A stretch of 64,000 bases of DNA from Phallusia mammillata (taxonomy: Eukaryota), in NCBI GenBank assembly GCA_965637545.1, contig OZ281500.1, forward strand, positions 3,348,001-3,412,000, in the 5' to 3' direction. Below, piece by piece: positions 190 to 64,000 of the stretch. A model generated the notes under the pieces. The model ran no database searches and was not told where the DNA came from. It saw only the letters and a program-made list of their open reading frames with translations. Numbering within the stretch: position 1 is the first letter of the stretch; the number at the start of each line of letters is the position of its first letter. The position numbers and the translations under genes are program-made.

Positions 190-1893
190 CAGTGACAAAG
201 GTACATCAGGCAATGAGTCGGTAATATCTTTTACTGTTCTAAACACATCGACCATACTTTCCGCTCTGTAGCGAGACATAAGATTCCAAGCGGCACACAA
301 AAGAACGGTTTTGGAAAATCCGGTTCTGTAACCAACAAAACAGATTTTCAATATTATCCATTACATTGTTGGCTTACTTTCTTAAGATTCAACAGCAGAA
401 GATACTTATACTGGCTACTACATCAATATAGAAATGATGCCGCTAAAAACTGATAAAACGCAGCAAAATTGGAGTGTTGCACGAATGTATGCACCTGGAC
501 AGAAATAGCATGCTGCATTCGTTAGTAAGCGAATGGTAGGATTCAATCATGGAAAGAAAATGGATCATGTTGTAGTCATCAGTTGGGGTTTCCTGATCAG
601 TCCAAAAGTTAAACTCGAACAGAAATATTTGACGCTAGAAAAAGTTTGAATAATGTTATTATTGTTAAGGACAAATGGCTAATGTAAACTGCGTAACCAA
701 CTTTTTGTTGCTGTTCTTCATTCACAACATATATTCTGGTGACTTTTACGTCTTCATTAATTGTTTCGTCAATAAATTGAAGAGAAATTGCACCGTACTG
801 TGCCGTTGTGTCATATTGGTTGGGCCAAACAATGGTTTGCTTCAAATACATGTGATATATGTTAGAAAACAAGTTATAGGCTACTGTGTTTCCTTGACAA
901 ATCCAACCATCAAACAATTCATAGATCAGTACTGTTGATCAATTTACATGTGAAAAATAATAATAAAAAAACATTAGAAAACAACTTACTCTGTTTTTTT
1001 TTTGACATGCAAGTCATAGACCAGAACTGCGGAAAAATTTACACGTTCAAAATGAAAAAAACCTAAAAAGCAACTTATACTGTGGTTTGTTTGAAACGCA
1101 AGTCGTAGACCAGAAATTACCATACATATGATAAAGTGATATTGTATTTAGCTTGACCGAAACCAAAAGGAATTTTTGAAATAAAATTTATATCTTCGTT
1201 GTATTGATGACCATAATGAAGATGTATAAGTCGACGTACCATTGGTTGGTCTACTTGAACGATAAATCCAGTGTTTTCCAGCAGCAGCACACGGAAAAAG
1301 GCGTCGATGCCATCGGCTGTTGGTTCGTCTCCAATCATCAAATGGTCAGCAGGGTTGTAAGACTGAGTAATAAATGTTAAAAAATAAATTCACGTTACTA
1401 GTTTATCAAGTTGCAAAAACACGGATCCGTTCGTTTCCCACCTCGACTTTGTAAATTCCATTTCTGTGTGAACCCGGAGCTCCTTCTGGTGATGTGTCTG
1501 TAAAATAGGATATTAGTTTAAGGCTAGGAACTATTGCTAAAAGAAACAAAATAAATGGAATTAATCCTCCCTCTCCCAAAAAACCCAAAACCTAGGTAAC
1601 TTTGATGCTATTTATTTAGTTTTTATTTTTATTTCGACATGCTTTGGGATGTTTTAAGGTGTTAGCTATTGTGTTTTACAATTGATTGAGCATGATATAA
1701 GTATATAATTTTAATATATATAAGTTATAAGTAAGATTTTGTTAAACTAAATAAACAACAAATCTGCATTTGAATGGAGAACTTACAATACACTTTGGCC
1801 GGGTTATCAATCTTTACTTGAGAAGTAGTTGATTCGCCAAACAAAATGCTCAGGTCATTGAACTCTTTACTCATTTCACTGGCATGCTGATAT
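190..1893 (-). CDS. Gene A PTP domain D2 (predicted inactive)
   Basis: FNFWTDQETP replaces the WPD loop. The P-loop equivalent is FLS|RTGFSK (no Cys, Arg to Lys) with the same phase-2 intron as in D1. Followed by VDVFRTVK. Confidence 0.85.
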
Positions 1894-4800
1894 CTATAGT
1901 AGCAATAGAAACAGTGTCAGTTTCACCATTCTTACTGTCTAAAGTCTTAACAAAAACAAAACTGTTAGGGTCTTGTATAGAGTATGTTTTCGGAGCTGGT
2001 TGATATGCCTGTGATTAATGTTCTTAACCAATTCGAATGTAGATAATTCGGTACCTTTTCTGTTGTCCCAGTTTCTCGTGTAACTGCTCGAATTGTAAAT
2101 CGGTTTCACTAAAAGCGACCGTTTCGGCAAGTAACTTGTGCATGAATATGTACTGCTCCTGTAAATATGATTGTAGTTTAAAGCGTGCTAACTTTTTAAA
2201 CCAGGCTTCAAATGCTTACAATGGTTTGAACCATTTCCATTCTTTGTTCCCTCATACCAACAACCGCTTTAAAAACATCAATCGAGCCAGTTTCACTTAA
2301 TTCCTTCAATAAGAAATCGAAACCAATGAAAGTTCCAGTTCTTCCAGCTCCAGCACTGAAAAACAATAACAGAAAATAAAATCTCTTTCTACTGGAAAAG
2401 TGTGTTAACCAATTCAAACCTGCAATGTACAACAGTAGGAACTGTAGTTTGCAGCTCATTTTGCAGTTGAGCATGATTGTCCTGAACTTCCTTCATATAT
2501 CTAACCAGACCTGTAGTGGTATTTGGAACGCCATGGTCGGGCCAAGCAATGAAATGATATTGCGTGATAAGGTGTTGGTCCTAAAATATCAAGTAATTTA
2601 ATCAGTTTCCTTCTAATTTTAAAGACACTTAAAACATACGGAGACGTAGGTGCTGTTAATTTCTTCGACAGTCATATGTCGGATGATGTAATTTCCTTTG
2701 TGGATGACTTCAACAACGCTAACACTAACCCGCTGATAGCTTTGGGCTTGTCCGATTTCTTCAGGCCAATATAAAGCACATTTGGACTGCAACACAAAAA
2801 CAAGGTTACGATGATAGGAAATGATTGTCGAATTAATGTTTTTGTGTGTGGCGTTTTGTGCTTTTTTAACTTCCCAAACCAATTGATTTGGTTTCACACA
2901 CATAGTTTCATTCCATGTATGTCATGTGCCAGTGATTTTATATTACAGTAAACATGTAGGTACATGGGAGACTTAAAGAGGTATTATAGACTCAGGAGAT
3001 ACTTATATTTCAGATAATTAGCTACCTTTCCTTTTTCATAGAGATTTGCAAGCATAACAATGATTCGGACGTTTTGCTCCCAAATCATTGTCCAGAAGTC
3101 ATCAACAGTCTTCGCAATCGGCCCTTGCGTAGCAATCCATTTGTTCGGTTCCTTAAATCCCTGTACAACAACATGCGGTTAAGAAATGCAAGAAGGATAA
3201 GTTTGGGCCTTTACGTTGATCACATTGAAAGAAAAATCATTAAGCCACGGTGTGCTGTACTAACGCAAACTTCGGATTAGCGTCTGCAAATCTTCGGACA
3301 CTTTTAACGATTGTTTGTTTCCCGTTAAGACCTACCCTCTTCAACACAAATGGTTAGTTTTTAACGTGCCCTGCTTGACCAACTAGCGTTTCTACCCTGC
3401 CTTGATTATCAGCGCACCTAATTTACTTTGCTTTTAACCTCGGGCACGAAGCGCCTCGCAGCGGCGTAGCTGCATAGTGTTTAACCCGATTGTGTCTTTT
3501 CTTTGCGCCCTAATCAAAAAATTACAGAACAATGATCCATAGTTCTGGTTTAAAACCGTCGCTAACTGAGCAAGGATCCCCACTTTGATCTAAAACCAAT
3601 ACCCAGTGATGGCCTGAGCCCATTTTCATGTCCATATTTCAGTTAGTTGCATACAGATGTAGGACGGACACACCTTTACATAGGAAGCGTTGATGTAATT
3701 ATTGTCACTTCCTTCGACTCCACGAAGAAATACCGTGTTGTGATCATCTACCAAAAAGTAACAAATATGTCAAAAAGTAGTTTTGGCTTTTAAGGTCTAA
3801 TCAATGCGACTGGTGACAAGGTATTCGCCGTACAGATCTATACGACACTGTTTCCTGTTGTATCGGCACATTACTTTGTAATAAGTTCTTTTTGACATAT
3901 TTCGATTTTTTTAAACAAAACGTTCAATCACCAGACAATTTGAAAGAGACCAAAAAACTAGTACTTGCAAATATACGTTATTATTAAACATTCTCGAACT
4001 GGAGTAGGAAAGTGTTATTTGTATAATTTAATACCAAAGACAGGCATTACGCACTGTGCAGTCAAAAATGTCGTGCAAGTGCCTGAACTATATCTTACAT
4101 GGTATGATATTCTTGTAACGATTTTTAGTCGTTTTGGATTCCGCCGTTGCGTCGTAAATACTTGCAAAGTTCTTAGATTCTTCTCTTACTCTCTGCAAAA
4201 ATAACATTAGTCCGCTTCACTGGTTAAGAAAAAAATGCGGCATGGTTGATGTATCAAATTACAATTGCCCACTTAAACCGAAAGGAAACAATTAAACTAA
4301 ACCGAGACTCAATCGACTGTCAAACCTTTTTCCCTCATACTAAAGTTGGTTGCAACGTTTCGTTGTGGTGTATACGTGTAAGGTTTGGGCAACATGAGGT
4401 TAATAAAATATGAGGTCTGTGAACACAAAGTCAACATATGTCCTTGTTAGCTTGTTTCATGCTGTTCTCGATGGAGGTACAACTCCAGGTTGCATCATGC
4501 TTTCAATAAATTCAAATACACACTTCATATTTCATAAAGTGTATCTTTTGAATCTGGGAACAAGGAAACTATAATTTAACCACTGGTCAGGTTTAACGGA
4601 GCTGCATTTTGACCGCCTTGCCGTACTTACATACCATTGCTGAACTAGAGCAGATGTTAATGCAACCTTACAATATGTTTAGGACATACTTCAAATTGTT
4701 GCTTCAAAGCTGCGTGACCGTTCTTTGAGCTGTCGATGAAAAATTCTCCAATATAAAACTTGAGTATATTCGTGCTTTCTTCCCTTGAAGTATCTAAACA

Positions 4801-7800
4801 AAAAATATCTTTATGAAAGATTTCCACCGAAACGAGTTGCCAATATTCTTATGGAAGCAATCCACAGAAAGATTTGTCGGTATCTAAAGAAAGATTGTCA
4901 AATCTCAAGAAAGAAAATCTTGGTATTTGGGGAGTTGTGGATTTAATTCAGAACACACAAATGACACTACAGAAGAAAACTTACGTTGTATGGGAACATC
5001 CCGTGCGCGATTGGGAGAGTTTCGTACAAGTGGAGCAATTGTTCTTTTCGCCCCAATCCTAGTCCGTATACGATCTCTGCGAAAGTAGATTTTTTGGTAC
5101 AGCTCATGTCGTTCCTAAGTTTTCTCAAACTTTATTTTACGAACCTATAGTACACGATCAGGACCAAAATAAGCAGAAGCACTAGAATAGCTGCAACAGA
5201 ACCGGCGATTACTGGCAAAGTCGAGGCTGCAGGAACTGCGAACAAATTACAAAAATGTTGAGTAAATGTCCAAAGTTTTGTTGCGTCACTTACGTTTGTG
5301 TTTCAAAGGCTGCTAGTTAAACCTAAGTTTATTGACTAACAATGCAAAACGTGTTGGATGAGAAGCTTATGTCAATCATTATTATATGTGTATATTATAG
5401 GTTTAGATTTTACCACAGGTTGGAACTAAAATACACACAGCCCGTTAAAACGCCTACTTCCTACAGAGCGTCGAAATAGATCAAGCTCCTCATGTAAACA
5501 CAACGCTTCCTGAGAATTACATTTAGAAGTTTAAATTAGTCCCGATGTGTAGGTTTTGATTATATCCCACTTACAAATATTAGTATATGCTAGTTCCGTG
5601 TTTATCCTCTTTTGAAAATATCAAACACCTGTTTAGTGTTCTTAACCTGGTATGACATACTTTGAAAACAATATCACACGATCTGCAGCATTTTGGTAAT
5701 GTTGCCTTTACACGTTGAATAAACAATCAATAAAGTGGGATTCGAGCCACACATACTACCCATAGCTGCGTTTTTTAAGTCCAAAAGGATTAAATGCAAT
5801 TTCACTCCACGTAAATTAAATCACAATAAACCCCAACCTACCATAAAGTACTGCGATCTAATTATCATGTGATCAAATGTTTGGATTCTGTCCAAAAGTA
5901 ACAAAGAACATACTTATCTCAACAGGTGGTGGTATTTCACATTTCCCAGTCACGTTAAAAATCGTGTTTGTACAAGCGTTTGTGATTGGTTGAAACTTCA
6001 CCACGAGTTCTTCATTTACACCAATCATCTCGCTGTGCTTTATTGACGAAATTTCAGTAAAATTTATTTCAGTCCAATTGGAAGGTTCTTCGACCGAATT
6101 AAACTCTCTTTTTCCCAAGTGAAGCTACAAAACACACTTTTACCATTTAAGCACACAACAAACATAATTTAGAAAACATTCTGTGAAGTTTAAGTTTTGG
6201 TGTTTTGTTACCTTGACCTCGTTGACCATGGTAAGAATATTAGTCGGTATGTGGACATCAATTTCACACACTGCCCCGTTTAATGACACGTTACCACTGA
6301 CGCCTTTAAATATGCTTGACGTCATTCCAATAACAGTGGGAATACTGAGTCGCCAAACATCCGGAAACATGCGTAGCTGAAACGTACACATTTTGCTATA
6401 AGGCATTGAAGGAGTTGACATAAAGTATTTGACACCTACCGAAACTTCATAAGAATCATCTGGCACTAGGTTGCCTAATGTGCTTGTGTAGATGTGGTTT
6501 CTTGTGGAAGGTTGCGTGACAGCATTGCTGACATTAACAGAGTGGGTCTCGTTCACTGCAGTCACAGCGTAGGTGATGGATCCATTGTAGCCAGTCATGT
6601 CTTTCCATTTAACGGCGATTCGGTCATAGTGACATTTGCTTGTGCTGATAATTTCCAATGCTGAAAAAGCAACGTTTAATAGCACGGCGGTTATTGATAC
6701 TGAAAATTATTTGCCATTTATTTTCACTTAACGTACAAAAAATAGAAAATAGTGCTTTTTTATTACGTGCCTAACCAAAGTCTGTAATTTCAAAAAAAGG
6801 ACAGATATACAAACCTGAAAACAAGCATATGTAATGATGCTCTGTAGAACATTCTTTTTGAACGACGCTTTTGTTATATACTTGAAATGTATTACAGGTA
6901 TTTCCACCGGGATTAGAGTCTGCAAATATAAATTGTACACTTTGGTGTATTATCGAAGTTTACCATAAACTGACGTTGCCATGAGTAAACACGGCGGTCA
7001 TAGTCGTTCAAAGTCTATTAGAGGTACTAATTTTGTAGTTCAAAACACCAACAGTCAGAAATACCTCCGAAATATTAGCATTTTAACATAGAATTATACC
7101 ACAAAGTATTGATGGCAAACCGATCAATTTCTAACAGGTATAATCTATGCACAAATCTACAAGTTGATCCTACAAATATTACTTGCAACACACAGTTGCA
7201 AATGCAGTTTCAAGACACTAAAAGGCAGCCTTAACACACTAACCTTCTACCCATATTTTCTTGTTTTCAAAAATGTCAAGCAAGGTGTTGTTTAGGACAG
7301 CTACATTGGGCAATTGGCCACCAATCGATTTGCAATGTTCTCTAGCATGACCAAAGTTGTTGGTTGTGTTTGGCCACGTGAAATATGTTCCATTGGAAGA
7401 CAAGAGATCTAGACACCATAAAAACATTCATTTCTAAAGACTAACAAAGTATAGTTAAATATAACTTTTATATCTCTTTGAGCACCAACATATAAACAGC
7501 TTTACGACTTTATAACTTACCAACACTCATGTTCATCTTTCTTAGTTTTGATGATGCAAAAGAACTATTTGCCCAACACACAACTGTGGAGCTTGGGCCA
7601 AATATAACTGAACTCGAGACAAGTAAGTTTGATACAATTCGGTCTGAATTGTCCAAAGGCATTTGAGTTATTTTAGTTGGGGTTTTGGCAGCGTTGTCAA
7701 TCATATGGCCGTTAATTTTCCAATTCACAATGGTCGAAGGAATTCCACCAAACGTGCATACAAACATTTGTGATTGCTTAAAAACTTCCGATTTCATTTT

Positions 7801-10800
7801 AGAAACAAAATAAGGTCCAACTGAAAAATACAGTTAGCGGAGTCACCATAACACTGTAACTGAATGGTAGGTGAAATACTAACCTTTTATGTTTGTCTTC
7901 GCTGTAACGGTACCATCACCAACTGAGTTGTTGACACTACAATCGTATTCACCCGATTCTTCAATATTAGGTTTTCGCAAATATAACACCGACGTTGTCT
8001 GATAGTGACTATTAGGAACAATTTGTTGGTAAACTGTCCTATTTGAGTCTGTTGTGGTATACGTAGAACGCCTGTAATGTAGAAGGAAAACAAAGAAATA
8101 CAATTAAGCCATGGTGACCTGCAGTAGCGCCACAGCTGTCATGTAACCATAATTTAGGCGCCTTGAGCAAGTAAAACATTTATAGACATCAAACATACAA
8201 TGGCTGCCAGACTAGGGTTACTCGACGTCCAAAATTTGGATGTAAAATCTTTGTCCGAAAATATATTTCAAAAACACAACTAATGTCCGTAATTTTAGCA
8301 TCTTACTAATTGTTTACTAAAATTTTTCAAAGTGGCCGGTGTAATTCAAGCAAGAGTGCATATACCTCGTCTAGTAATTAATCAAAACCGACAAAAAAAT
8401 CAAAACCGGGTTGATTTTTTTACTTATTTAGGGGGTTTGGGGATGTTTTAAATAGTTGTGTTTACTATTGTTTAGTAGACGGTCTTTGACATAGAATGCT
8501 CTAAAAAGTAATATGGCGCCAATTTAGTTTCGTGAAAGGTATTTAATAAAAGTGTCAGAAAGTTGACCCACTCCAGATATGGTACACCCTAAGCTAGATA
8601 ATATTGTTGCAAGATAGGATGCACGAGGACCTACTTGCTCCAATAAAGATTAGGAGTGGGAAAACCAAAAGAGGTGCAAGTTATGTTGTGCATCTCATCT
8701 TCCAAAATTATTACTTCACTTCTTGTCGTCGAAATGTTTGCTTTCACTAAAAAAACAGCAACATTAGTACAATAACTATTAGGTACAGTGAAAAAAAAAC
8801 ATGTCCAACCTTGTGCCTCGAACATTGCCTCCACACCGTTTGTATTAACGTTTGTTGCTTTGCATTTGTATTCTCCCGTTTGTTCAATTGTCAAATCGTT
8901 GAAATAAAGATGAGATACTGATTTGTATTTACCGTTGGTCGTTCGATGCTGGTAAATGGAAATGTTGTTCGACAAACCAACTGATGTTCCATTTCTACAA
9001 GGCTTGGGTTATTATGGCATCTTTGTTAACACGTGCATATTTATCCTAACCTTATCCAGTTGGTAACTGGTAACGGATATCCGTATGATTCACAACTGAC
9101 ATTAAACTTTCCAGGCAACATAAAAACTTTGTTCACTGGTGTGATGGAAATGTTGGCTGCCACTATAAATGGGAATATAACGTAACATGCTTAGGTCGTG
9201 TATGAGAAAGTGGAAAATAATTACCTGTAATATTTAATGTTTTCTGTTTTTCATCAACGTTGTCGTTGTCTGTCACACAAACGTAAATCCCTGAGTATGA
9301 CACGTCGTTGACAAGAATGTGGAGTTGTGTTGTTCTGGAGTATGTGTTTTCACTCACCACACTCGTGTAAATAGGAGCAGAATTAGATTTGCTGACCGAA
9401 AACCCAAATCTATAGCATACGTAAACACAAAGATTTCAAAAAGTTAAAATTGATTATTGAAACTAAATGGTAAAAACCGTTTCCACTCCACGGTTGGTAT
9501 TGGGGAACCATACGAAATGCAATCAACATGGTATTGTTTTAACTGCTCTGCGGTAATGGTCCAGTGTGTGAGCGATATTCTTGAAACGCCTGTGGGAAAT
9601 GCAAGTGATTGAAGTATCTACTTGTTATGGGTAATTAAACTAAGTTTTAAAGGCATTTCTTACCTTCGACTTGTAACTCTGATTTTGTGGGAGGATTACC
9701 AAGAGAGCTTCGACATTCGTAAATTCCTGTTTGTGAATCATGTGTTACGTTGAGATGAAGACGGGTGATTCTCGAAAACACACTTTCAGTGGTAATTTCT
9801 CGTTGGTAAATCAAAAAACTTTTTGAATTTGAAACCAGTGTATCGTTTCTAAAATAATTCGGAATTTGAAAATAATCAAAACTTACCACGTGACAGGTTA
9901 CCTGTACCAGTTGACTTCAGGCTTTGAAAATCCAAACGAAGTACAATCAACTATCACTTCAACACCATAGTTAGGCGTGACACTACTATTGGACACATGC
10001 ACAGCCGCCCGTACTAAAACAAAGTTTAATATGTGTCATTTTCTATGTCCACTTAAGTGTATATGTAAACGTTTAAACATCACTTCAGCTTACTATTAGC
10101 TGTAAACGATTTCGTTTTCGCATCAACACTATTAGTTGTTGTACATTTACAAACGTCAGATTGTGAAACATTAATAATGGTTATATATAGTCTGGCACGT
10201 TTCATGTATTCCGATTTTGCGATAGTTGTTTGATGAACCAGGAAATTTGTGTCTCCGGTTACCGTTACTCCATTTCTAAAAACATGGTTTAAAGTGAAGA
10301 AAGAACCAGGACGCACAAACGTATTGCATTCGTATACTTCTTCCATGTAACAGTGGGAGATGGATATCCAAAAGAAATACAATCAACCAAACGCTGTTGA
10401 GCAGAACTTACACTGATTGCAGATTCGATGGTTATGTTTGGAGAAACTAAACAAAATTAATTTATAAACTATAGCTTGTTTTGTTTGATAGAGATGTTTT
10501 GTTTGATAGAGTACGTAAATTCAATATGAAACACACAATTTCAAAATAACACTGTTTTAAGAACCACAAGTATTCCGCAGCCACTTATAAGAAATAGTGT
10601 GATGTTGAAATAGCTATTAGAATTTACTTCCAACTGATCTGATGGCACCAATATTCAGCCTCCAAAGACATACCTTTAACTCTGAGGTTCTTTGTGTTCG
10701 TTCCTCCACCGTTCCAGTTTGTAGCTTCACAAACGTAATTTCCTGCTTCAGTCGCGTCTCTCAAAGTAAAATATAGCACAGATCGACCTGTGTATGTGTT

Positions 10801-34858: not shown

Positions 34859-34988
34859 TTTTTCGGTCTAACCTAAAAGCAGTCCATCATACTGCACATC
34901 TATACACCAAACAATATACAATATTTATATAGACAACAGTAAAGTGGGCGATCTCCTGTTATTGCGGAGAATTCACAAAACCAACAGG

Positions 34989-48332: not shown

Positions 48333-48889
48333 TTTTAAACCAAAAACGAGGAGAATATTTTAGTATTTTAGGGGACCACCCTTAGTTTGTGGTCCCTTGT
48401 TTGCACAGCTGTTTTGAATCAGTTAACTATGTTTGATTGCACTAAAAAATGTCTAACAAACGAACGCATTAATTAACTTGGCAAACGAACTGATGTCATA
48501 TACAATACAACACAAAAACATTAGTAGACTTACGATAAGCATTTTTACACAGGACAGAATAAAGTATCATCAAAGATGCACAAATCTGACAAAAATCTTC
48601 ATTCCATATTAGCCACCGTCTTTTATAACCTTAGTTGTTTCATTTCAAGAGATAACCATGAAAAAGTCGGGTATAGTAGGGCAAAAACAGTGATCGGCAC
48701 TGGGTTTAAATAATAATACTACGTATAGTACAAACTATCAGATTCACCCCAGATATTGTTTGAAGTAAATCCTATTTAACATTTAACAAGAAAAGAGGGA
48801 GTAAATAGTGGCATAATGCATTCAATTTAAGTTGTTTAGAAAATTAACCCATTTTTGGGCGCTATTGGAGTAAATGTTGTGGCTACAAG

Positions 48890-54600: not shown

Positions 54601-57600
54601 ACTCACCTGCAGTGAACTATAGTAGGAGTTTCTGTGCGCAAATCGCATTGTAGTTGTGTTTGAGTTTCTTGTACTTCCTTTATAAACCTAAGAAGGCCTG
54701 TGGTGGTTTGTGGAACTCCGTGGTCGGGCCAAGCTATGAAATGGTATTGAGTAACGATGTATTGCTCCTGAGATAAAAATAGTGTTGGAACATGTACCAA
54801 TGTACTTGCCATGTCAAAATGGGTAAAACTTCGCAAAACTCTGCTCTAGCGGAAACAACTTATTAGGTTTAATGTTTTGGTTATGTGTGTAGGAAGTAAA
54901 TAAAGCTTTCCACCTAGTTCTTGGAAACAAACAATTGCTAACAGAATGTTCTTTCCCTACAATTACAGAAAAATGGCTTTTACGAGTTGACACATTTGAA
55001 AGCTTTTTTAACACTAAACGCTTACTATTTCATAAGTACTGTTTGTTTCTTCAACGTTCATTCTTCTGATGACGTAAGAGCCCTTCTTGATGACGTCAAT
55101 GACGGTGATATTTACTCCCTCGTAGCTTTTGGTTTCATGGACGTCTTCAGGCCAATATCGGGCACATTGCGACTAAAAAGTCGTGAATATACACAAAAAT
55201 GTAATATTTGTAACAGCTTTGGAATAAAAAATGCATAACGGTTTGTTGAATATAACTGATAGAAGATTGAAGAAAATTACCTTTCCCTTCTCCCATAGAT
55301 TTGCCAGCATAACGATAACTCGAACATTTTGTTCCAATACCATTGTCCAAAAATCACCCACTGTGCTGTCAAGGGGACCTTGGGTTGCGATCCACTTGTG
55401 TGGTCGATTGTAACCCTGAAGAGAAACTTTTAACAACGGCAAAGGTGTTTACATTATGACATTATATTTGAATGTACCAACCTCCACATATGAGGCATTA
55501 ATGTAATGGTTTTGGTTTCCTTGTAAACCACGGAGAATTACTCGGTTGTTATCATCTGTCAAGCAATATAACCAAAAGTTCAGACGTTTTAGTGTTGACT
55601 CATTTTAGCGGTTAGTAAAAAACCTAATCATCTCAACTTCCAAAATCAAGAGGAGGCACTTATTTAAAGCAGTGATAAACTAGTAACATACACTTTGATT
55701 TTTGGGTGTTTCTAGCCTGTCTGAGCTTTACTTGCCTTTAGATGCACAGTATCAGTTACGATAGGAAACTAATATTAGTATGTAGGATTTGTAACAAGTA
55801 GGTAACTTAAGATAATGACTTACATGGTGTTATGTTCTCGTATCGGTTTTTCTTAGCATTCGTTGATGCTGTTGTGTTTTCATACACACTTGCATTGGTA
55901 ATCGATTCATCCTTGATTGTCTGCAAACGTCAAATGATGACTAAGCATAAGATAATTGCTTACTAAGCACATCGCAAAAGGGTTACAACAAACATCCACT
56001 AAATCTTTAAAATTCGATCCAGTACATTTATGTACTTGTCGAAACGTAGTTATATATAAGCTATTGCTGCCAGGCATAATATCAAGTTTGTAGAGCTCTT
56101 CTGGCAAATGTAATTTTCTTCCGACGTTTCGACGTCCTATACAGGTCGTCTTAATCAGGGTAAATAACACTGAATGCGACTAGTACAGTGCATTCTCCGT
56201 GATCGACGGGCAACTTGTTCCAAACAGGTGACTCATCCAAAAACAGAGGGTTTTGTGACACTTCCGTACATACCGAAACTGACGGATATTCTGCGGCGTA
56301 TGTTGCGTGACTTCGGCGTGGCGGTTGGCGTCCAACCTGCCAATACTCTCCGCAAGCTACTGAATCACCCGAAAGATCCAATCAACACCTTTGAACAACG
56401 TGGTGTTGTATATTCTATTCCCTGCGCCGAGTGTCCGTTAATATATATCGGGGAGACTCGAAGGTCACTCAACACCCGACGAAAAGAACATCAACGGGAT
56501 GTTGCCAACAGCGACGCGAAGAAGTCGGCCCTCTCCAATCACGCGGTATCACAAGGCCACCGTATTGATTTCAATGCGGCGTCTGTTGTGGCCCGGAAGC
56601 CTGACTACAGGAAAAGACTATTTCTTGAGTCATGGAATATTCACCAACGGGGCAACACAATGAACATCAAAACAGACGTGATGCTTTCAGCGTGCTACAG
56701 GCACCTGCTTAAAGATTAGAGGCCCAATCATTCGTTATCGCGCGGTGTTTTCGTTGCGTTGTAACGTGCTTGCGTTCGATTCTTTTTTCCTTTGTTTATC
56801 GTGCACTGTACTAGTCGCATTCAGTGTTATTTACCCTGATGAAGACGACCTGTATAGGACGTCAAAACGTCGGAATAAAATTACATTTGCCAGAAGAGCT
56901 CTACAAACTTGAAACGTAGTTATGTTCTACACAAATGTACTGGCTCTGATTTTTTGCTCAGAGTGAACAAGAATCCGTAATCGTGAAAAACTCAATATAG
57001 ACAAATGGTGTGTGAAATAGTCAATTAAATTAGAACAAGTTATTTGCAACACACACTTAACTAGGTGCATTAAAAAAGAAAATGACTTTTAGTGGGTGTT
57101 TCTAGTGAATCTACACCCGTGGCCCCCGGAACCAGAGTTGCAAGCGGGCCCGAAATCTGAGCCCGAACCCGAAAGTATAAGCCCGAAGCCCGGCCCGAAC
57201 CCGAAACGCTTTTGCAAAGCCCGTTTAGGCCCGAAATTTTGATTGACAGGCCTATCCACGAAAGCCTTGCAACAAAGGATGAGATAGAAAAAAGAGAAAG
57301 ACAACAAACACAATGAACAATAGTAGACAATGAGGTAAACAATACGTTTTAGAGGAGGGTGGGCATTAGGTCAAAGCCAGAGAATTGTTACTTAGCTGAG
57401 TGATTTTATTTAAAAAACAATGGCGGACACGGAACGTAAAGTCAGGCCCGTTTTAAGCCCGTTTTCTCACAAATACCTAAGCCCGAACCCGGCCCGACTT
57501 GCAACTCTGCCCGGAACGCAGCTCGTGGCCGCCCTGGGGGGGTCCTGGGCCCTAGCTGAGAACCCCTGACTTACGAAGTGTTTAACAGATTGCAACAAAC

Positions 57601-60600
57601 AGATGACTTTGTGCATAATTGCATATGGATATAATACGACACTTCACGTTAGTTTCAAATAAAGCGGCACATAGTAGATTGCACACTTTACTGACGCCTG
57701 TACAGGAAGCGTTCATATGACTAAGTCAACTACGTAACAGGAATAAGGGGACAAAGCGCAGCAACTTTACCACCGAAAAGTCGCTACGCGAAGTACAATG
57801 CACTTCAGTGTTTAAACAAAATCAGTGTTTCGAAAAACGAGGCAAATTAACACTGTAGCTATATCATAGTGTCAAAGAGCACATAATAACGGTTTTGTCG
57901 CGTTAAAAACGTTCCAACACAAGTGTTGTAAAACGCCATCGACAACATGTATCATGAAGCAAAAACAAAAGAGGTGCCAGCTATAGATTAACCACAAAGT
58001 AAAAAGGTTGTTACTTTGTTTGGCTTATTACTCAGCCTTGCATTGAATCGCAAACCAAATGGCAAAGTAGATTACGCATTGGTGTGTTGCAACAGAAATT
58101 GAATGAGTAATGACTATTTCCTGTTGTCTTGAAGCCGAATGTATTATGTCAGACAATAAGGAAGCAGTTACACTTACTTTAAACTGTGATTTTAAAGTCT
58201 TGTGGTCGCTTTTTGAGCTATCGATGTAGAAGTCCACAAGATAAAACCTCAAAATCTTCGTGTGGTTTTCCGCAGATTCAACAAGAACGTCTATAATTTA
58301 CAAATAAGTGTTAGTAATACTATTTACATGTTGGTATTACGTAATTACTTAGAAACAACAAGCTAGTCTGCCTTTTAAGTATTCTTTACGGATAAGAGAA
58401 AATAACAAGTTTATACAAAATGAGCTGTCAATTCTCGGCTGTATATCACCATTTCTAGTTGTTTTTGTTTACTATTTTTTGATGAACATAGAATTGTATA
58501 AAACGTTGTGCAACGTTTTAGTTTTTTTTGACCGTACAAAGACAGCAATGTCCTGAAAGCATAATCATGGAAAATCGTTTTAAACTTGTGTGACGAACCT
58601 GTACTGTTTGACAGTGGCATCTGCTGTGAACTTTTACGTCGTATCACCGTGTTTCCTCTTGCAGCATCAGGCGATTTTCTTTGCGAAATCCATATTTTTA
58701 GTTGCTCTCTTTAGCATTACAAACGTATGTTTTAACCCAGCTTTCATGAAATTGCATTAAACTAAGTCAACTGACATTTCCTTACCTGTAAACGCCGCAA
58801 AGTATGAAGACAATTAGAAACAAAAGGAAAATCGATGAGGGGGCGGCGATTGCAGCTAGAGGCAGGGCCTCAGAAGGAGCTACAATAAAATAACTTGAAA
58901 AAAGTGCCTTGGGTTATACTTAACCATGAGTGTATATTTTACGTAATGTAACAAGCAAAGTATACTCATCAAATCCAGTGCAAGATTTTTCCCATTAACT
59001 TTTGGCAAACATTTTTTCGGCAACAACATTTTATGTTAAAACTTTACAATATATTTCAAAAGGTAACTTACTCTCCGAGCTTAAGGAAACTTTGCATTCT
59101 CCGCTAAGTTTAAACACTGTGTTGCGACAATGCGTTGTGATTGGTTGAAACGTGGCAAATAGTTGCTGATTTAAACCAATCATCTCGCTGTGTTTTGATG
59201 CATTCGGAGACAAAGTCACTTCGGTCCAATTGTTTTGATCAGCAGTGCCCCCAATTTGCGTTTTTAAGTAGCGCAGCTGCAAAATGTATGTAAATCTTGT
59301 AATATGTAACATGCACCAGCGCACTAAATAAAATATTATTCAATTGTGTAATACATTCAATTGTCAACTGTAATAGACATATGCTTCACGGTTTTTAATG
59401 TCAGTTTGCGCTAGAGTTTTAATATACCTTGATCTCACTAATCACACTTGATATATTTTCAGGGATATTAATTGCGATTTCACAAACTTCTGCCTTCAGT
59501 GACATTTGAGCGCTGACGTCACGAAAAATACTTGACGTTACTGCAGAGGTTGCGGGGGCATTGATTTTCCAAACTTCCGGAAACAATTGTATCTAAACAG
59601 AGCATTGTTGTGATAATGAGTTTAACCAATCTATTATAACCAATACCCACGGATACATCATAGGAAGCGTCTGAAGTCAAATTTCCGACTATACTTGTGT
59701 AGATGTGGTTGCTTGTTGCAGTTTGTGTGACAAGTTTACTGACATTAACAGAGTGGTTGGAATTTACTGTTGTTACGATGTGAGATATTGATCCGTTGTT
59801 ACCAGTCACGTCTTTCCATTCCACTGTGATTCGGTCGGGGTAGCAATTACTTGTACCCAGAATTTTAATCGCTATTAGGAATATAATGAAAATTATTAGT
59901 CACAAAATCAGTAGGGTGCAGAAACAAAACCGTTTTACGACTTACCCATACACACTACATACTCACACACGTATTAGTAAAACATTGCAAAAGTTGAAAA
60001 TATCAAGCCAACAAATAATAGCCTATTATGTCAAAACAGTATGCACCATCTGTAGCTTATTACAAAAGTTACACCTGAAAACACGCATATGAACTGATTT
60101 TCTTTCGTGCATTTCCGTGTGTTTACTGATTGCGTTACTGTATTAAAAGCAACACAATCATCTCTTCCATTAGTGGTCACGTTACCTGTTCAAAAACAAC
60201 AACCCTTTGATTTTAAAAAACGAGTGAGTTTCAATAACGTACCTTGCAGCCATGAAATATTAACACCAACTTCATTCAAGTAAACGCTGCTGTTTAAAAT
60301 GGACAAAGTGGGCAATACACCACCAACGGATTCACAATATTTTTTAGCACTGGAGAAATCAAGAGTTCCATTGGATGTGGCAAAATATGTCCCGGCAGCA
60401 ACAAGGAGGTCTATAAGCATTAAGAGTAATAATAATAATGCAAATTATTTCGGCAAATCTGAAATACGTTTTTTTAGGGTAGGTAAGTCACATGTTTCTG
60501 TTTACGATTACCTGCATTCAATTTTATTGTTCTTTGTTTTGATAGTGCAAAATTTTTGGACCAACACCCAACTGACGAATTGGGACCGAATACTATTGAA

Positions 60601-63600
60601 CTTGAAACTAGCAACTTAGACTCGACTTCATTGCCTGTTTGCTGATTTGTGATCTTAGATGGTGTATTTGATTCGTTTCCAATTTGTCGCCCATTAATTG
60701 TCCAATAAACAGTTGGAACGGGATCTCCGGTGAATGTGCACGTAAACGTTTGTGATTGGCTAAAGTTTGGCGATGTACCAATAGTGGCAACATATGGAGC
60801 AACTGAAACACATTTTATGTTGGTTTAATCGAAATCATGTCTGCATTTTATCATTACCTTTCACATTTGCGTTAGTTGCAGATCCGGTTCCTATTGTGTT
60901 GCAAGTATATTCTCCACTGTCCTCGATTGTGGGTCGGTAAAAGGTTAACGATGAGGTTATTTGGAAATCGGTGACTTTGATAAGCCGTTGATACACCGTA
61001 TTTGATGTGTTGGTTGAAACATTGTAGGAACCTCTGCCAAATTCAATATTTTATGTAACAAGCAAACACATAAAAAGTAAAATCATACAAAAACAAGTGT
61101 AGTTTAGAAACAAATTACGTAGTATTCCGCTTTGTAGTGCTCTTACCTGGTCCAATAAACATGCAAAGCGGGATATCCTAAATAAGTGCAATTTGTGCTG
61201 GTAATTTTGTCTTCTAAAACAGTTAACTCAGTTGTTGATAAGTATGTGTTCGGCTTCACTGCAAAACAATATGACACATAACTTCATAATTGTACCACAA
61301 AAGACAAACCAAAGTTCAAAATAAGGCAAATGAAAATCTATCATGTAAACAAATTACATCTAACCTGTTGCTGTAAAAATAGCCATTGCACCGCTTGTAT
61401 CAACATTTGTAGCTTGACATTTGTATTTTCCAAATTGTTCGATTGCCGAAATATTGAAGAACAGCTTTGATATTGATTCGTATTCGCTAATATTGGTTTT
61501 ATGTTGGTATATCGGGCTTAGGGGTGATGAACTAACTGGACTTCCATTCCTGAACAAACATTACATTGCAAGTTTTGGAACAGTAAGTTATAAACTCACA
61601 ATAATACCGTGTCCATTCTAACTTTGGTCGCGGAAACCCGTAAGATTCACAATCGATCACGAATTCATCAGGAATTGTTGCAACTTTGCTGGTTAACGAA
61701 ATTGATATATTGGCGGGCACTGCGAAAAGTTAACAGTAGCAAATGTATTGAAACTGGATTTTAAACTACAAAATCACGAACCTTGGATTTGCAATGTCTT
61801 TTTCCTAAATGTATTGCCAGCATCATTTGTCGCTTGACAAACGTAAAAACCAGATTCCATGATATTGTTAATGGTAAAATAAAGTCGAACAGTTTGAGAA
61901 TAATTTCCTGTCGTGTGTAAAGCTGCATAAATACGAGATGCTGTTGTTGACCCAGTAATTTGGTGTTTGTTCCTGCATCAACATAACGCTCATTATGTTA
62001 ATACGTGGCACAACTCTATATTTACAACACCTTAGCCACGTAACAGTCGGTTTGGGAAAGCCGTACGAAATACAATCCACTTCATAACGTTGTGTAAAAT
62101 TCACAACCACTTTTGTTTGCGTAAGCGTTAGGTTCGGTGCCACTAAAAAGTTGCAAACAAATACCGTTACTGCACGTTATTAACACTTGATTGATAATAA
62201 AATATACAAATTTTTACCTTTTACGTAAATCTCTTTTACTATCTCGGGTCCAGCTGAGTTTTTTAAAACTCGACATTCATATATTCCGCCCTCAGTAACG
62301 TCTTTAATGTTAAGATTTAACTCGTTTATTCTGAAGTAAGTTCCTTGTAAAATGTATATTTGCCGTGTTATCCCATAGCTGTCCGAATTTGCGACCAATC
62401 GGTTTAATCTAAAACATTGGTTTACAAGATTACAAATTGAAGATTTTGTTACGCATTAAATGTGTTTGAAACACCCACCTATACCAAAGAATTCTGGGAT
62501 TAGGGTTTCCATACGATGAGCAGTTAACGGTTTTTGCCACATCTTGTTCAACCGTAACGTTGCTTTGTGTAACAGATATATTTGCAGGTACTTTAATAAA
62601 TACAAATTTAATTTAAATAACACGTATATGATGAAGAAACATAACCCTTTATTTGTTAGTTATTTTGTTACTTGCCATACAAAGTGAAAACTTGAGTTTG
62701 TAGATTCCCGACACTGTTACTTGCAAAGCATTGATATTCTCCACTTTGCGAGACGTCACTGATGTTTAAGTAAAGTCGAACTCTATATTCAAATCCTATG
62801 TTTCTTACAATGACGAAATACACCGGTAAATTGGAGTTTCTGGATACGGTGATCCCGTTTCTGAAATGCAACCCATGAATAAATTTCCACACAAAATATT
62901 CGTAATAACTCTATAATTTCACATAATATGCTCAAATTAGATTTGCAAACATGTTTAAAGCACAACTGGAGCCCCATTTCTACTATCTTAACCCAACGCA
63001 TCCATAAGAGCTGCCAACAATATAATAAAACGTAATAAAACACGAAACTTGCTAAATAAATACACGCAAATACTAAAATTAAGCCTTAAACTAAGTTGAT
63101 TTAAAAAACTATGCAATCCCCTTTACGCATAAATGCGACCCAAACGTAACAACTCGGTCAATAGGAATCTGTACCTTTTCCATGTAGCGCTGGGTCTTGG
63201 AAATCCATAGGATACACAACCAACTGACTTTCGTTCGGCGTAATTGCCGATAGTAGAAGGATGTGTTGTTGTTAGGTTTGCTGGCACTAAAGGAGGGTAT
63301 GAAACAAATTTAAGGTATTTTTATCTCGTAGAAATGTTTAAACAAACCTTTAACAGTTAAAGTCGTTCTTACTCCACCACCATCCCAGTTTGTAGCTTCA
63401 CAAATATAATCCCCAGATTCAGCAACGTCACCAATACTTACACGAAGCACAGATCGTGCTTCGTACTTGTTCGTTTCACTGGTTTGGTAAATGTTATTTG
63501 AAGAAGATGCAGGGATCAATGCCGTGTTTCTATAATTTAAGATAAATGTCACAAAGTATGGTAAAAACAAAGCAAGCCGGTTAAGTCACTGCGACTTCAG

Positions 63601-64000
63601 TAATTTTATATATCAGTGATCGAGTTAAACAGTACGTGTACGAGGTTGTTGAGGTAAACTGTAAAGTCAAGAACCATGTGCTTATCAACATATCCTGGCT
63701 AAAATGTGCTTCATTTTTACTTACAGGCAGCGATAAAGGAATAAAATGTTAAAAAGTTACAAAATGTTTCACCCACACATATTGCCTTGGTTATTTCTAT
63801 CAAAATTTTTCTGTCAACCTCCACGCAAAATTGTAACATAAACAATCACACAAGTAATAAATTTGAAAACAAGTTCAATCCTATAAAAACAGGCCCTGTT
63901 TCTAAAAAAAAGGCATTTTTAATAATCTGACTTTTTCGCAACAAAAATGATAGGGCGTTTAAAACATATAAAAAATACTTTTTCCATTGAACTATTGGGT
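51697..64000 (-). CDS. Gene D: close paralog of gene B, 5' part (SP, CTLD, first Ig) beyond the right edge
   Basis: Last exon 51697-51756 [19 protein letters not shown]; P-loop exons 54607-54767 and 54403-54538; TM 58786-58879; Ig exons 60.5-64 kb. The window ends inside the exon matching B ~27247-27268. Confidence 0.9.
53059..53390. mobile_element. hAT-type MITE, 332 bp, present in gene D intron and absent at the gene B site
   Basis: TIRs cagtggttcccaaact / agtttgggaacccctg; TSD gtgtagag / gagtagag; single gtgtagag at the empty site near 17610. Confidence 0.88.
56174..56719 (+). CDS. C-terminal fragment of Penelope-type protein (RT thumb/linker + GIY-YIG endonuclease)
   Basis: [10 protein letters not shown]...[30 protein letters not shown]...[12 protein letters not shown]...RLFLESWNI: GIY-YIG with the CCHH pattern typical of Penelope-clade elements. 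The true start is missing. Confidence 0.88.
   Translation: MRLVQCILRDRRATCSKQVTHPKTEGFVTLPYIPKLTDILRRMLRDFGVAVGVQPANTLRKLLNHPKDPINTFEQRGVVYSIPCAECPLIYIGETRRSLNTRRKEHQRDVANSDAKKSALSNHAVSQGHRIDFNAASVVARKPDYRKRLFLESWNIHQRGNTMNIKTDVMLSACYRHLLKD
56826..56880 (+). ncRNA. Minimal hammerhead-ribozyme-like motif (G12 to A); mirror copy on the minus strand at ~56112-56168 (G8 to U)
   Basis: CTGATGA - GAC/GTC stem II with CCT-GTAT-AGG hairpin - (G/A)AAAC GTC; stem I pairing only partial. Confidence 0.7.
57133..57509. mobile_element. hAT-type element, 377 bp, with gcccgaacccg subterminal repeats; D-specific
   Basis: TIRs cagagttgcaag / cttgcaactctg; perfect 8-bp TSD cccggaac; absent at gene B ~20760. 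Confidence 0.9.

What the first reader, a model, noticed from the sequence alone, without database searches (positions are those of the whole stretch)
190..64000. Rapidly turning-over tandem family of lectin + multi-Ig receptor tyrosine phosphatases: candidate invertebrate immune or recognition receptor locus
Seen in sequence: at least 7 same-strand copies or fragments (A, R1, B, E, C, R2, D) of one architecture, SP-CTLD-8 Ig-CTLD-FN3-TM-active D1-dead D2, including intact genes, a pseudogene, a chimera and 5'/3' remnants. Established knowledge: vertebrate tandem-domain RPTP classes (CD45/R1, LAR/R2A, MAM/R2B, R4, R5) are mostly single-copy and conserved, and none has CTLDs bracketing an Ig array. 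Lectin-bearing RPTPs have been reported from sea urchin (recalled as PTPRLec; needs verifying), so novelty is not guaranteed. Inference: birth-and-death evolution with diverging ligand-facing domains is what immune and allorecognition receptors do, and here the inhibitory enzyme is built into the receptor rather than recruited through an ITIM.
Basis: partly seen in the sequence, partly recalled or inferred. Interest (0 to 1): 0.85.

Follow-up and report, generated by a model that had tools for sequence, protein, structure and literature searches.

The report
Lectin-and-Ig receptor phosphatase gene cluster
This sea-squirt DNA holds three intact genes, one broken hybrid copy and three scraps of a cell-surface tyrosine phosphatase whose outer part carries a lectin-like cap, eight antibody-like domains and a second lectin-like knob; the layout is real, transcribed and apparently undescribed, but nothing here ties it to immunity.

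Summary
All seven elements lie on the minus strand. There are three intact-looking genes (190-13332, 16842-29813, 51697-64000+), one chimeric pseudogene (about 36025-48591), one orphan 5' piece (33746-34867) and two 3' scraps (15193-15302, about 49869-50014).

Gene 2 joins 40 exons into one 1,877-codon frame: signal peptide, CTLD, eight Ig-like domains, a short CTLD-like domain, FN3, stalk, TM, active D1 and a D2 with Cys-to-Ser. Spliced contigs from four studies confirm 15 junctions. They link Ig7 through to D1. A Phallusia mammillata database entry matches another junction exactly.

Birth-and-death features are present: recent duplicates, conversion mosaics, a pseudogene and fragments. But dN/dS is below 1 everywhere (ectodomain 0.49, cytoplasmic 0.21). 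The Ig block is the most homogenised part, not the most diverged. The Ig positions are old and orthologous between gene types. CTLD1 lacks the sugar-binding motifs. No immune expression could be tested.

This scan has already found lectin-FN3 phosphatase clusters on other DNA of this genome; the Ig array and the N-terminal CTLD are what is new here. I found no description of this layout. Verdict: a new variant of a known kind, of moderate interest.

The parts
190..13332 (-). The last small exon lies beyond the window start.
   Evidence: Joined frame of 1,841 codons with no stop and all splice sites AG/GT. Exon chain. D1 carries WPD and [10 protein letters not shown].
15193..15302 (-). R1: scrap of a D2 active-site-region exon (D2f-like), with a frameshift and a stop, about 1.5 kb downstream of gene 2.
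   Evidence: tblastn, 55-68% identity to the D2f exons of genes 1 and 2, split over two frames with an in-frame stop.
16842..29813 (-).
   Evidence: Joined ORF with a single terminal stop. Spliced contigs of 4 runs confirm 15 junctions. P0002 (Phallusia mammillata CAB3263946.1) is identical across the 27422|27356 junction.
29744..29813 (-). Gene 2 leader exon (signal peptide [23 protein letters not shown], phase 1 donor).
   Evidence: Scan for ATG plus a hydrophobic stretch plus a phase-matched GT donor. No RNA check was made.
28018..29507 (-). Gene 2 CTLD1, three exons (29325-29507, 28395-28490, 28018-28161).
   Evidence: Pfam Lectin_C scores 25.8 bits for exon c of gene 2 and 27.2 bits for exon a of gene 1, both above the 22.6 cut-off. 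No EPN/QPD or WND motif is present (read from the sequence).
27422..27700 (-). Gene 2 first Ig-like domain, single exon, no Cys pair, weak Calx-beta likeness.
   Evidence: AlphaFold2 pLDDT 84 with seven strands. Foldseek top matches are Ig V, JAM and NCAM domains, TM 0.6-0.74. The profile search hits Calx-beta repeat proteins. No Pfam hit.
24126..27356 (-). Gene 2 Ig2-Ig7: six Ig domains, each built from a 112-nt exon plus a 176-191-nt exon in constant phases.
   Evidence: Exon chain. Pfam I-set, Ig_2, Ig_3 and ig hits at E 1e-4 to 1e-2 on half-domain exons. Junctions 24070|24126 and 24301|24415 are seen in RNA contigs.
23780..24070 (-). Gene 2 Ig8, single exon.
   Evidence: Pfam Ig_3 E 2.4e-5 and I-set E 1.6e-4. 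Both flanking junctions are in RNA contigs.
23337..23673 (-). Gene 2 CTLD2-like domain, 92 aa in two exons, with the long-loop region missing.
   Evidence: Lectin_C E 0.006 on exon b. The exon a profile has DEC-205 and the 1wk1 chain among its top four hits, but only at E 0.1-0.6. hhalign against CTLD1 is not significant. Junction 23446|23505 is in RNA contigs.
22920..23140 (-). Gene 2 FN3 exon.
   Evidence: Pfam fn3 E 0.016. The boundary at 22920 comes from an RNA contig. The fold prediction failed with pLDDT 39.
22342..22861 (-). Gene 2 membrane-proximal region, two exons, about 120 aa, no family assigned.
   Evidence: Conserved in all four copies. Junctions are in RNA contigs. No Pfam hit.
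21452..22153 (-). Gene 2 TM exon (22063-22153) and two juxtamembrane exons (21879-21985, 21452-21564).
   Evidence: Hydrophobic run [23 protein letters not shown]. The 21882-21985 exon was found only through RNA contigs.
18581..20348 (-). Gene 2 D1 phosphatase domain, seven exons, with [17 protein letters not shown] and the Q-loop.
   Evidence: Pfam Y_phosphatase at E 5e-16 to 2e-4 on four exons. PDB RPTP hits. Six junctions are in RNA contigs.
16842..18523 (-). Gene 2 D2 pseudo-phosphatase domain and C-terminus. The nucleophile Cys is Ser, the P-loop is SMAVLSRTG and WPD is WTD.
   Evidence: hhalign of D2 against D1: probability 85%, E 5.8e-6, 181 columns, 22% identity. No Pfam hit at exon level. 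The terminal exon [19 protein letters not shown] is.
33746..34867 (-). E: orphan type-A leader, CTLD1a exon and 7 codons of CTLD1b, 4 kb upstream of gene 2.
   Evidence: 84% aa identity to gene 1 CTLD1a. Leader-like ORF at 34718-34867.
36025..48591 (-). The 5' part (leader to Ig6) is type A, with 72-95% DNA identity to gene 1. The 3' part (CTLD2 to the end) is a separate lineage, nearer type B.
   Evidence: Stop in Ig2b, frameshifts in Ig5a and Ig5b, stop in D1c, the D1 active-site exon out of frame, and CTLD1a, Ig7 and Ig8 absent. A 1-nt deletion in the last exon. Identity pattern.
49869..50014 (-). R2: degraded counterpart of R1, downstream of gene 4.
   Evidence: 83% DNA identity to 15294-15419, and a 12-aa match to the start of the D2f exon.
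51697..64000 (-). Ig2a is cut by the window end, and the leader, CTLD1 and first Ig-like exons lie beyond it.
   Evidence: Projection of the gene 2 exons gives a 1,582-codon frame with only the terminal stop, canonical splice sites and indels in multiples of 3. D1 has [10 protein letters not shown].

Best explanation
The window holds a lineage-specific tandem cluster of genes for one type-I receptor protein tyrosine phosphatase, most likely of the solitary ascidian Phallusia mammillata. The protein has about 1,880 residues and about 27 N-glycan sequons. Its long ectodomain runs: N-terminal C-type-lectin-like domain without the sugar/Ca motifs, eight Ig-like domains, a compact CTLD-like knob, FN3, and an unassigned stalk. 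One TM helix follows, then a catalytically competent D1 and a D2 whose nucleophile Cys is Ser (a pseudo-phosphatase).

Shown: the genes, their splicing, transcription of gene 2, and the catalytic motifs.

Inferred: it works like other Ig/FN3-type RPTPs. The ectodomain binds a protein or matrix partner (in trans, in cis, or homophilically). This binding places, clusters or excludes D1 relative to tyrosine-phosphorylated substrates, while D2 serves as a regulatory or docking module.

The locus grew by duplication of a two-gene unit (type A, a 3' scrap, type B). It was then reshaped by gene conversion and unequal crossing-over, which left one chimeric pseudogene and three fragments. The surviving copies are under purifying selection. 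An immune role is possible but has no support here.
For: - Intact joined frames for genes 1, 2 and 4.
- Spliced contigs from four studies confirm 15 junctions. One 2,232-nt contig links Ig7, Ig8, CTLD2, FN3, stalk, TM and the juxtamembrane exons, and runs on into D1. One 2,528-nt contig links stalk, TM and D1, and continues 1,270 nt further 3'.
- P0002 is identical across a further junction and names the species.
- Pfam Y_phosphatase, Lectin_C and Ig hits.
- Ig-like fold predicted for the first domain.
- D2 is homologous to D1, with Cys replaced by Ser.
- dN/dS is 0.49 in the ectodomain and 0.21 in the cytoplasmic part.
- Mosaic identity of 81-99% between genes 2 and 4, equal in introns and exons.
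- Positional orthology of Ig2-Ig8 between types A and B.
- Lesions of gene 3.
Against: - No ligand, tissue or activity data exist.
- The CTLD2, FN3 and stalk assignments are weak.
- The D1 subclass is unresolved. Exon-level PDB scores put PTP-alpha/epsilon and LAR/sigma about level.
- Only gene 2 was checked for RNA.
- Transcript contigs of other individuals show 35 of 36 differences in the ectodomain, 23 of the 36 being amino-acid changes. That would also fit a polymorphic recognition receptor.
Confidence: 0.7

Rival explanations
1. One reading: an immune or self/non-self recognition receptor family evolving by birth and death. Variable lectin/Ig ectodomains sense ligands, and the built-in phosphatase gives the inhibitory signal that vertebrate receptors obtain through ITIM-recruited SHP-1.
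For: Tandem multigene locus with a pseudogene, a chimera and fragments. Ectodomain dN/dS is higher than cytoplasmic (0.49 against 0.21). Differences between individuals' transcripts sit almost wholly in ectodomain exons, with 16 in the 221-nt FN3 exon of one run. CTLD and Ig are common immune-receptor modules.
Against: dN/dS is below 1 in every block. The Ig array is homogenised between recent duplicates, and introns are as similar as exons. Ig positions are anciently fixed. Ectodomain and cytoplasmic identity between the two types are close (45% against 52%). CTLD1 lacks the carbohydrate-binding motifs. No haemocyte or challenge data could be obtained. The species is solitary, so colony allorecognition does not apply.
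Confidence: 0.15
2. The apparent tandem duplication (unit 1 = genes 1 and 2; unit 2 = genes 3 and 4) is partly an assembly artefact, in which two divergent haplotypes were placed side by side.
For: Genes 2 and 4 are 97-99% identical over 3 kb including introns. Ascidians are highly heterozygous (general knowledge).
Against: Other blocks of the same pair are only 81-90% identical. Gene 4 carries a roughly 1.1-kb larger intron between the juxtamembrane and D1a exons (20349-21451 in gene 2 against 55921-58177 in gene 4). Genes 1 and 3 differ by missing exons and a different 3' lineage. E lies between the units only once.
Confidence: 0.05
3. The family is decaying. The 'intact' copies are transcribed relics without function.
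For: One of the four full-length copies is dead and three fragments remain. D2 is highly degenerate.
Against: Three frames of 1,582-1,877 codons across 34-40 exons are open with canonical splice sites. dN/dS is 0.2-0.5. All D1 catalytic motifs are kept. Gene 2 is correctly spliced in four studies.
Confidence: 0.05

Closest known systems
LAR-type (R2A) receptor tyrosine phosphatases (PTPRF/PTPRS/PTPRD; Drosophila Lar)
   Same: Type-I membrane protein. N-terminal Ig domains followed by FN3. Tandem D1 (active) and D2 (inactive or weak). Exon-level D1 scores against LAR and PTP-sigma are among the best.
   Different: R2A has 3 Ig and 4-8 FN3 domains and no CTLD. Here there are 8 Ig-like domains, one weak FN3, a CTLD at the tip and a CTLD-like knob before the FN3. 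D2 is far more degenerate (22% identity to D1, Cys to Ser). D1 does not clearly group with R2A.
PTP-alpha/epsilon (R4) phosphatase domains
   Same: Summed exon scores for D1 are about as high as for LAR/sigma.
   Different: R4 has a very short glycosylated ectodomain and a D2 that keeps the Cys. No tree was built here.
Lectin-FN3 receptor phosphatase clusters of the same genome (earlier notes s1-351705, s1-394843, s1-355933 and others)
   Same: Same genome. Tandem arrays with many broken copies. Lectin-like domain, then FN3, TM and tandem PTP, which is the same order as the membrane-proximal half here (CTLD2-like, FN3, stalk, TM, D1, D2).
   Different: Those notes describe no Ig array, no second (N-terminal) CTLD, and sister genes with tyrosine-motif tails. 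No tail-only sister is present in this window. Sequence relatedness could not be tested (one search was blank).
CD45 (R1/R6)
   Same: Heavily glycosylated ectodomain. Active D1 and inactive D2. The paradigm for an immune RPTP acting by size-dependent segregation.
   Different: The CD45 ectodomain is a mucin-like region, a Cys-rich domain and FN3, with no Ig or CTLD. D1f and D1e exon scores against CD45 are lower than against R4 and R2A.
Macrophage mannose receptor / DEC-205 family (the name the source gave to the Phallusia fragment P0002)
   Same: Contains CTLDs. The weak CTLD2a match is to DEC-205.
   Different: That family has a ricin-type domain, FNII and 8-10 tandem CTLDs, with no Ig array and no phosphatase. 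The database name is a similarity label on a 95-aa fragment.
Sea-urchin lectin-bearing RPTPs
   Same: Would share a CTLD on an RPTP.
   Different: Could not be verified. The term is absent from the paper library and related searches found nothing. The only related trace is a Fugu CTLD-containing gene model labelled PTP-GMC1, listed in PMC514892.

Membership tests
Classical receptor-type PTP with tandem domains | D1 with KNRY, WPD, HC(X5)R and Q-loop motifs | tested here: met
   Pfam Y_phosphatase on four D1 exons, E 5e-16 to 2e-4. [25 protein letters not shown] and QNVNQY are read in genes 1, 2 and 4.
Classical receptor-type PTP with tandem domains | Signal peptide and a single TM helix between ectodomain and PTP | tested here: met
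   Leader exons with hydrophobic cores and phase-matched donors. TM exons at 22063-22153 and 5145-5235. This was judged by inspection; no predictor was run.
Classical receptor-type PTP with tandem domains | Second PTP-like domain (D2) | tested here: met
   hhalign of D2 against D1: probability 85%, E 5.8e-6 over 181 columns. The exon lengths and phases run parallel. The nucleophile Cys is Ser, so it is a pseudo-phosphatase.
R2A (LAR-type) subclass | 3 Ig plus 4-8 FN3 ectodomain | tested here: not met
   8 Ig-like domains, one weak FN3 and two CTLD-type domains.
R2A (LAR-type) subclass | D1 groups with LAR/sigma/delta in a tree | tested here: inconclusive
   Only exon-level PDB scores were obtained. 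R4 and R2A are about level, and R5 is best for one exon. No tree was built.
C-type lectin (Ca-dependent sugar binding) | CTLD sequence signature | tested here: met
   For CTLD1, Lectin_C scores 27.2 and 25.8 bits against a cut-off of 22.6. For CTLD2, only 17.8 bits on exon b and E 0.1-0.6 on exon a, so CTLD2 is inconclusive.
C-type lectin (Ca-dependent sugar binding) | EPN/QPD and WND motifs of Ca site 2 | tested here: not met
   Gene 2 reads ...[29 protein letters not shown]... and gene 1 reads ...AWLGGSIGNGLCVRL...WGWGTGSC.... CTLD2 lacks the long loop altogether.
Immunoglobulin superfamily domains | Ig profile match with the Cys...Trp...Cys core | tested here: met
   Ig8 scores Ig_3 E 2.4e-5. 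Half-domain exons of Ig2-Ig7 hit I-set, Ig_2, Ig_3 and ig at E 1e-4 to 1e-2, all below the gathering scores. C-x-S-x-G-x-P and Y-x-C motifs are present. The first domain is Ig-like by predicted fold only.
Diversifying immune-receptor multigene family | dN/dS above 1, or excess divergence in ligand-facing domains | tested here: not met
   dN/dS is 0.44-0.9 in ectodomain blocks. The Ig block is the most similar between duplicates. Ectodomain identity is 45% against 52% cytoplasmic.
Diversifying immune-receptor multigene family | Gene birth and death in a tandem cluster | tested here: met
   Three intact genes, one chimeric pseudogene and three fragments.
Diversifying immune-receptor multigene family | Expression in immune cells or on challenge | not testable with these tools
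   The runs are coded and no tissue is given.
Lectin-FN3 RPTP family of this genome (earlier scan notes) | Sequence relatedness of the CTLD-like, FN3, TM and PTP core | not tested
The sequences of the other windows are not available.

The most novel reading that the evidence does not exclude
These are polymorphic recognition receptors of an invertebrate chordate in which the inhibitory enzyme is part of the receptor itself. Ligand binding by the lectin-like tip and Ig rod would hold an active tyrosine phosphatase at the contact site, so that 'self' or 'harmless' contacts are silenced without ITIM/SHP recruitment. The ectodomain differences between individuals' transcripts (23 amino-acid changes among 36 differences, clustered in FN3 and Ig7) would then be functional alleles.
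Probability: 0.12. Interest if true: 0.8.

Novelty: new variant of a known kind. Interest (0 to 1): 0.45.

Why it matters
Receptor tyrosine phosphatases are usually few and conserved, with a small set of ectodomain layouts. Here a chordate outside the vertebrates has built a new layout by domain shuffling: a lectin-like cap, eight Ig-like domains, a lectin-like knob and FN3. It has multiplied that layout in tandem, and gene 2 at least is transcribed and correctly spliced.

This gives a concrete, cloneable set of natural variants (45-99% identical) for asking how RPTP ectodomains choose ligands and set phosphatase position. It also gives a defined locus in which to test whether ascidian lectin-type phosphatase expansions have anything to do with immunity. 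If they do not, it remains a clean example of birth, conversion, chimera formation and death in a receptor gene family.

Tried and rejected
- A profile search of 1.84 billion representatives with the first Ig-like exon found only one close relative, the 95-aa Phallusia fragment. The other hits, those examined being Calx-beta repeat proteins, are not orthologues.
- The search for homologous proteins with the 188-aa FN3-stalk ORF of gene 1 found nothing. The length window excludes full-length proteins.
- The look-up of encoding contigs for P0002 and for one window ORF returned 'not on record'.
- AlphaFold2 on the FN3 exon gave pLDDT 39 and was unusable.
- hhalign of CTLD2 against CTLD1 matched only the C-terminal C...FIC motif and was not significant.
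- A PDB profile search with CTLD2 exon a returned CTLD chains near the top, but only at E 0.1-0.6.
- Exon-level PDB searches did not resolve the D1 subclass.
- The first Pfam pass used one wrong-frame ORF for CTLD1c. This was corrected.
- Seven paper searches found no description of this layout or of 'PTPRLec'.
- Look-ups in the scan's notes by Ig-related words and by sequence were blank.
- I considered that the first domain is a true Calx-beta domain. I rejected this as a family assignment because there is no Pfam hit and the predicted fold matches Ig domains best.
- I considered that the variant FN3 exon in run X17 comes from gene 4, 1 or 3. I rejected this because only 3-5 of its 16 variants match any copy.

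Full report
WHAT IS THERE

The window is AT-rich (35-40% GC) with no N runs. Long stop-free stretches lie mostly on the minus strand. Clustering them by similarity gives families with four members spaced about 17 kb apart, plus one family of 44 Ig-like ORFs.

DNA self-comparison shows that copies 2 and 4 are 90-92% identical over more than 9 kb, introns included. Copies 1 and 3 are 72-85% identical over their 5' halves only. The offset is about 34-37 kb, so the repeating unit holds two genes.

Notes of this scan call the genome a sea squirt. A database protein, P0002 (CAB3263946.1, 'macrophage mannose receptor 1-like', Phallusia mammillata), is identical over 92 residues to two spliced exons of gene 2. 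The source is therefore almost certainly Phallusia mammillata, a solitary ascidian.

GENE MODELS

I chained protein-level matches between copies and chose splice sites by phase. I then corrected the model with RNA evidence.

- Gene 2 (16842-29813) joins 40 exons into one frame of 1,877 codons with a single terminal stop. Every intron is GT-AG except one GC-AG.
- Gene 1 (190-13332) joins 39 exons into 1,841 codons without a stop. Its last 20-codon exon lies beyond the window start.
- Gene 4 (51697-64000+) joins 34 exons from Ig2b to the stop into 1,582 codons. Its 5' end lies beyond the window end.

The joined sequences were built only inside scripts, from the window file.

RNA EVIDENCE

I laid contigs of four runs from four studies on 18900-24500. 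They show 15 intron-skipping joints with CT..AC ends, which is GT..AG on the minus strand. These joints fixed three things:
- the D1 active-site exon at 18889-19024;
- the FN3 donor at 22920;
- an exon at about 21882-21985 that I had missed.

One 2,232-nt contig runs through Ig7, Ig8, CTLD2, FN3, stalk, TM and the juxtamembrane exons into D1. One 2,528-nt contig runs through stalk, TM and D1, and continues 1,270 nt past the laid stretch. That is enough for D2 and the 3' UTR, though this last point is an inference. The Ig/lectin ectodomain and the phosphatase are therefore one transcript. P0002 adds the junction between the first Ig-like domain and Ig2a.

Only gene 2 was examined, and the tissue of the runs is not disclosed.

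DOMAINS

- D1: four exons hit Pfam Y_phosphatase at E 5e-16 to 2e-4. The motifs [18 protein letters not shown] ([10 protein letters not shown] in gene 4) and the Q-loop are all present.
- D2: no Pfam hit at exon level, but it aligns to D1 over 181 columns (hhalign probability 85%, E 5.8e-6, 22% identity). SMAVLSRTG aligns opposite [10 protein letters not shown], so the nucleophile Cys is Ser. WPD is replaced by WTD. 'Dead D2' is supported.
- CTLD1: Lectin_C scores above the gathering cut-off in two separate exons. The EPN/QPD and WND positions are not conserved, as read from the sequences.
- First 'Ig': no Pfam match. The profile search hit Calx-beta repeat proteins. The AlphaFold2 model (pLDDT 84) is a seven-strand sandwich whose best Foldseek matches are Ig V, JAM and NCAM domains. 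I call it Ig-like.
- Ig2-Ig7: each is split into a 112-nt exon and a 176-191-nt exon in constant phases. They give I-set, Ig_2, Ig_3 and ig hits at E 1e-4 to 1e-2.
- Ig8: a single exon with Ig_3 E 2.4e-5.
- CTLD2: 92 residues with no long-loop region. Support is weak but comes from both halves: Lectin_C E 0.006 on exon b, and two lectin-domain chains (DEC-205 and 1wk1) among the top four hits at E 0.1-0.6 on exon a. hhalign against CTLD1 is not significant.
- FN3: Pfam E 0.016, plus the I-x-V-x-W and Y-x-V-x-V pattern. The fold prediction failed.
- Stalk: about 120 residues before the TM segment have no assignment.
- The ectodomain carries 27-28 N-glycan sequons.

STATE OF THE COPIES

- Gene 3 is dead. 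It has a stop in Ig2b, frameshifts in Ig5a and Ig5b, a stop in D1c, the D1 active-site exon out of frame, WPD changed, a 1-nt deletion in the last exon, and CTLD1a, Ig7 and Ig8 missing.
- Gene 3 is also a chimera. Leader to Ig6 is close to gene 1 (72-95% DNA identity, introns included). CTLD2 to the end is a different, older lineage, somewhat nearer to genes 2 and 4.
- E (33746-34867) is an orphan type-A leader, CTLD1a exon and the first 7 codons of CTLD1b.
- R1 (15193-15302) and R2 (about 49869-50014) are paralogous scraps of a D2 exon, one downstream of each type-B gene.

In transcription order they run: gene 4, R2, gene 3, E, gene 2, R1, gene 1.

EVOLUTIONARY DYNAMICS

- Between genes 2 and 4, dS varies six-fold along the gene: 0.04 in Ig3-Ig7, 0.07-0.08 in FN3 and D1, and 0.22-0.27 in Ig8, CTLD2, stalk and D2.
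- Introns are as similar as the neighbouring exons: 97-99% across 24000-27266 and 81-88% across 23157-23957. This is the signature of gene conversion or staggered duplication, not of selection on exons.
- dN/dS is 0.49 for the ectodomain and 0.21 for the cytoplasmic part, and never exceeds 1. The highest value is 0.9, in FN3, on 16 substitutions.
- Genes 1 and 2 are 48% identical overall, 45% in the ectodomain and 52% in the cytoplasmic part.
- In an Ig-by-Ig identity matrix the diagonal is highest in every row (36-55% against 17-35%). The seven-Ig array therefore predates the split of types A and B, and no Ig was duplicated recently.
- Transcript contigs of other individuals differ from the reference at 36 sites in the laid exons. 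Of these, 35 are in the ectodomain, and 23 of the 36 change an amino acid. This again gives a ratio near 0.5.
- One run has 16 differences in the 221-nt FN3 exon that match none of the window copies. This could be an allele or an unseen paralogue.

HOW IT MOST LIKELY WORKS

Shown: an expressed type-I membrane protein with a complete catalytic D1 and a nucleophile-less D2.

Inferred from what is established for RPTPs (D1 active, D2 inactive or weak, ectodomains setting contacts and position; PMC10815196): the long, glycosylated Ig rod with a lectin-like tip binds a protein or matrix partner. That binding places or clusters D1 relative to its substrates, and D2 acts as a regulatory or docking module.

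Ca-dependent sugar binding by CTLD1 is unlikely because the motifs are absent. Whether the partner is self, a neighbouring cell, matrix or a microbe is open.

COMPARISON WITH WHAT IS KNOWN

- Closest in working principle and general build are the LAR-type (R2A) phosphatases. The R2A membership features (3 Ig plus 4-8 FN3) are not met, and the D1 class is unresolved at exon level.
- No human subgroup R1-R8 carries a CTLD (PMC10815196).
- The membrane-proximal half (CTLD-like, FN3, TM, D1, D2) has the same order as the lectin-FN3 phosphatase clusters that this scan has already reported many times on other DNA of this genome. The N-terminal CTLD and the Ig array are the new part. A shared origin is plausible but untested.
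- Seven literature searches found no description of this layout and no 'PTPRLec'. The only trace of a CTLD-bearing RPTP is a Fugu gene model labelled PTP-GMC1 in a table of PMC514892.

VERDICT

The birth-and-death description of the locus holds. The immune or allorecognition reading, and the claim that ligand-facing domains diverge fastest, are not supported by the tests that could be run; expression in immune cells could not be tested.

It is a new variant of a known kind (an Ig/FN3-type tandem RPTP with added lectin-like modules) in a genome already noted for lectin-type phosphatase expansions. Interest is moderate.

LIMITS

- No joined-protein search or fold was run, by rule.
- No D1 tree was built.
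- RNA was checked for gene 2 only.
- Full-length relatives in other species could not be reached because of the length window of the homology tool.

Noticed in passing
window 22920-23140 (gene 2 FN3 exon): The transcript contig of run X17 differs at 16 of 221 bases here, against 0-2 per exon elsewhere. Run X1 carries another 5-site variant. Only 3-5 of the 16 match genes 4, 1 or 3, so this is either a very divergent allele or a paralogue outside the window.
   Followed up: partly
window 21564-21882 (gene 2 intron between the two juxtamembrane exons): All four runs show 4 unplaced letters at this joint, which makes the transcript 3 nt longer than the canonical GT-AG model from the reference. 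Gene 4's matching exon is also 3 nt longer (110 against 107). This may be an allele or a conversion difference.
   Followed up: partly
window 55921-58177 (gene 4 intron), especially 56054-56910: This intron is about 1.1 kb longer than in gene 2, lies in a GC-rich stretch (0.44 in the 56001-58000 bin), and has a 181-aa plus-strand ORF at 56174-56719. Another note of this window calls it a Penelope insertion with hammerhead copies.
   Followed up: no
window 25941-25942 and 62674-62675: The intron after the Ig3b exon has a GC-AG donor (ATG|gcaagt) in both gene 2 and gene 4.
   Followed up: no
window 47256-47732: A direct repeat of about 320 nt (89% identity, offset 160 nt) lies in the 5' region of pseudogene 3, where the CTLD1a exon is missing.
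   Followed up: no
window 33746-34867: The orphan type-A leader and CTLD1a exon sit 4 kb upstream of gene 2's own leader. Whether they are ever spliced onto gene 2 was not tested.
   Followed up: partly
window 27422-27700, 11093-11371, 45171-45461: The first Ig-like domain shares a motif ([23 protein letters not shown]) with Calx-beta repeats; one of the repeat proteins it hits also carries an S-layer homology (SLH) domain. It is the best-conserved ectodomain exon between gene types (66%).
   Followed up: partly
window 20583-20769 (gene 2 intron): Runs X17 and X1 have contigs lying inside this intron, with long unmatched ends. This may be a repeat or a transposon fragment transcribed elsewhere.
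   Followed up: no
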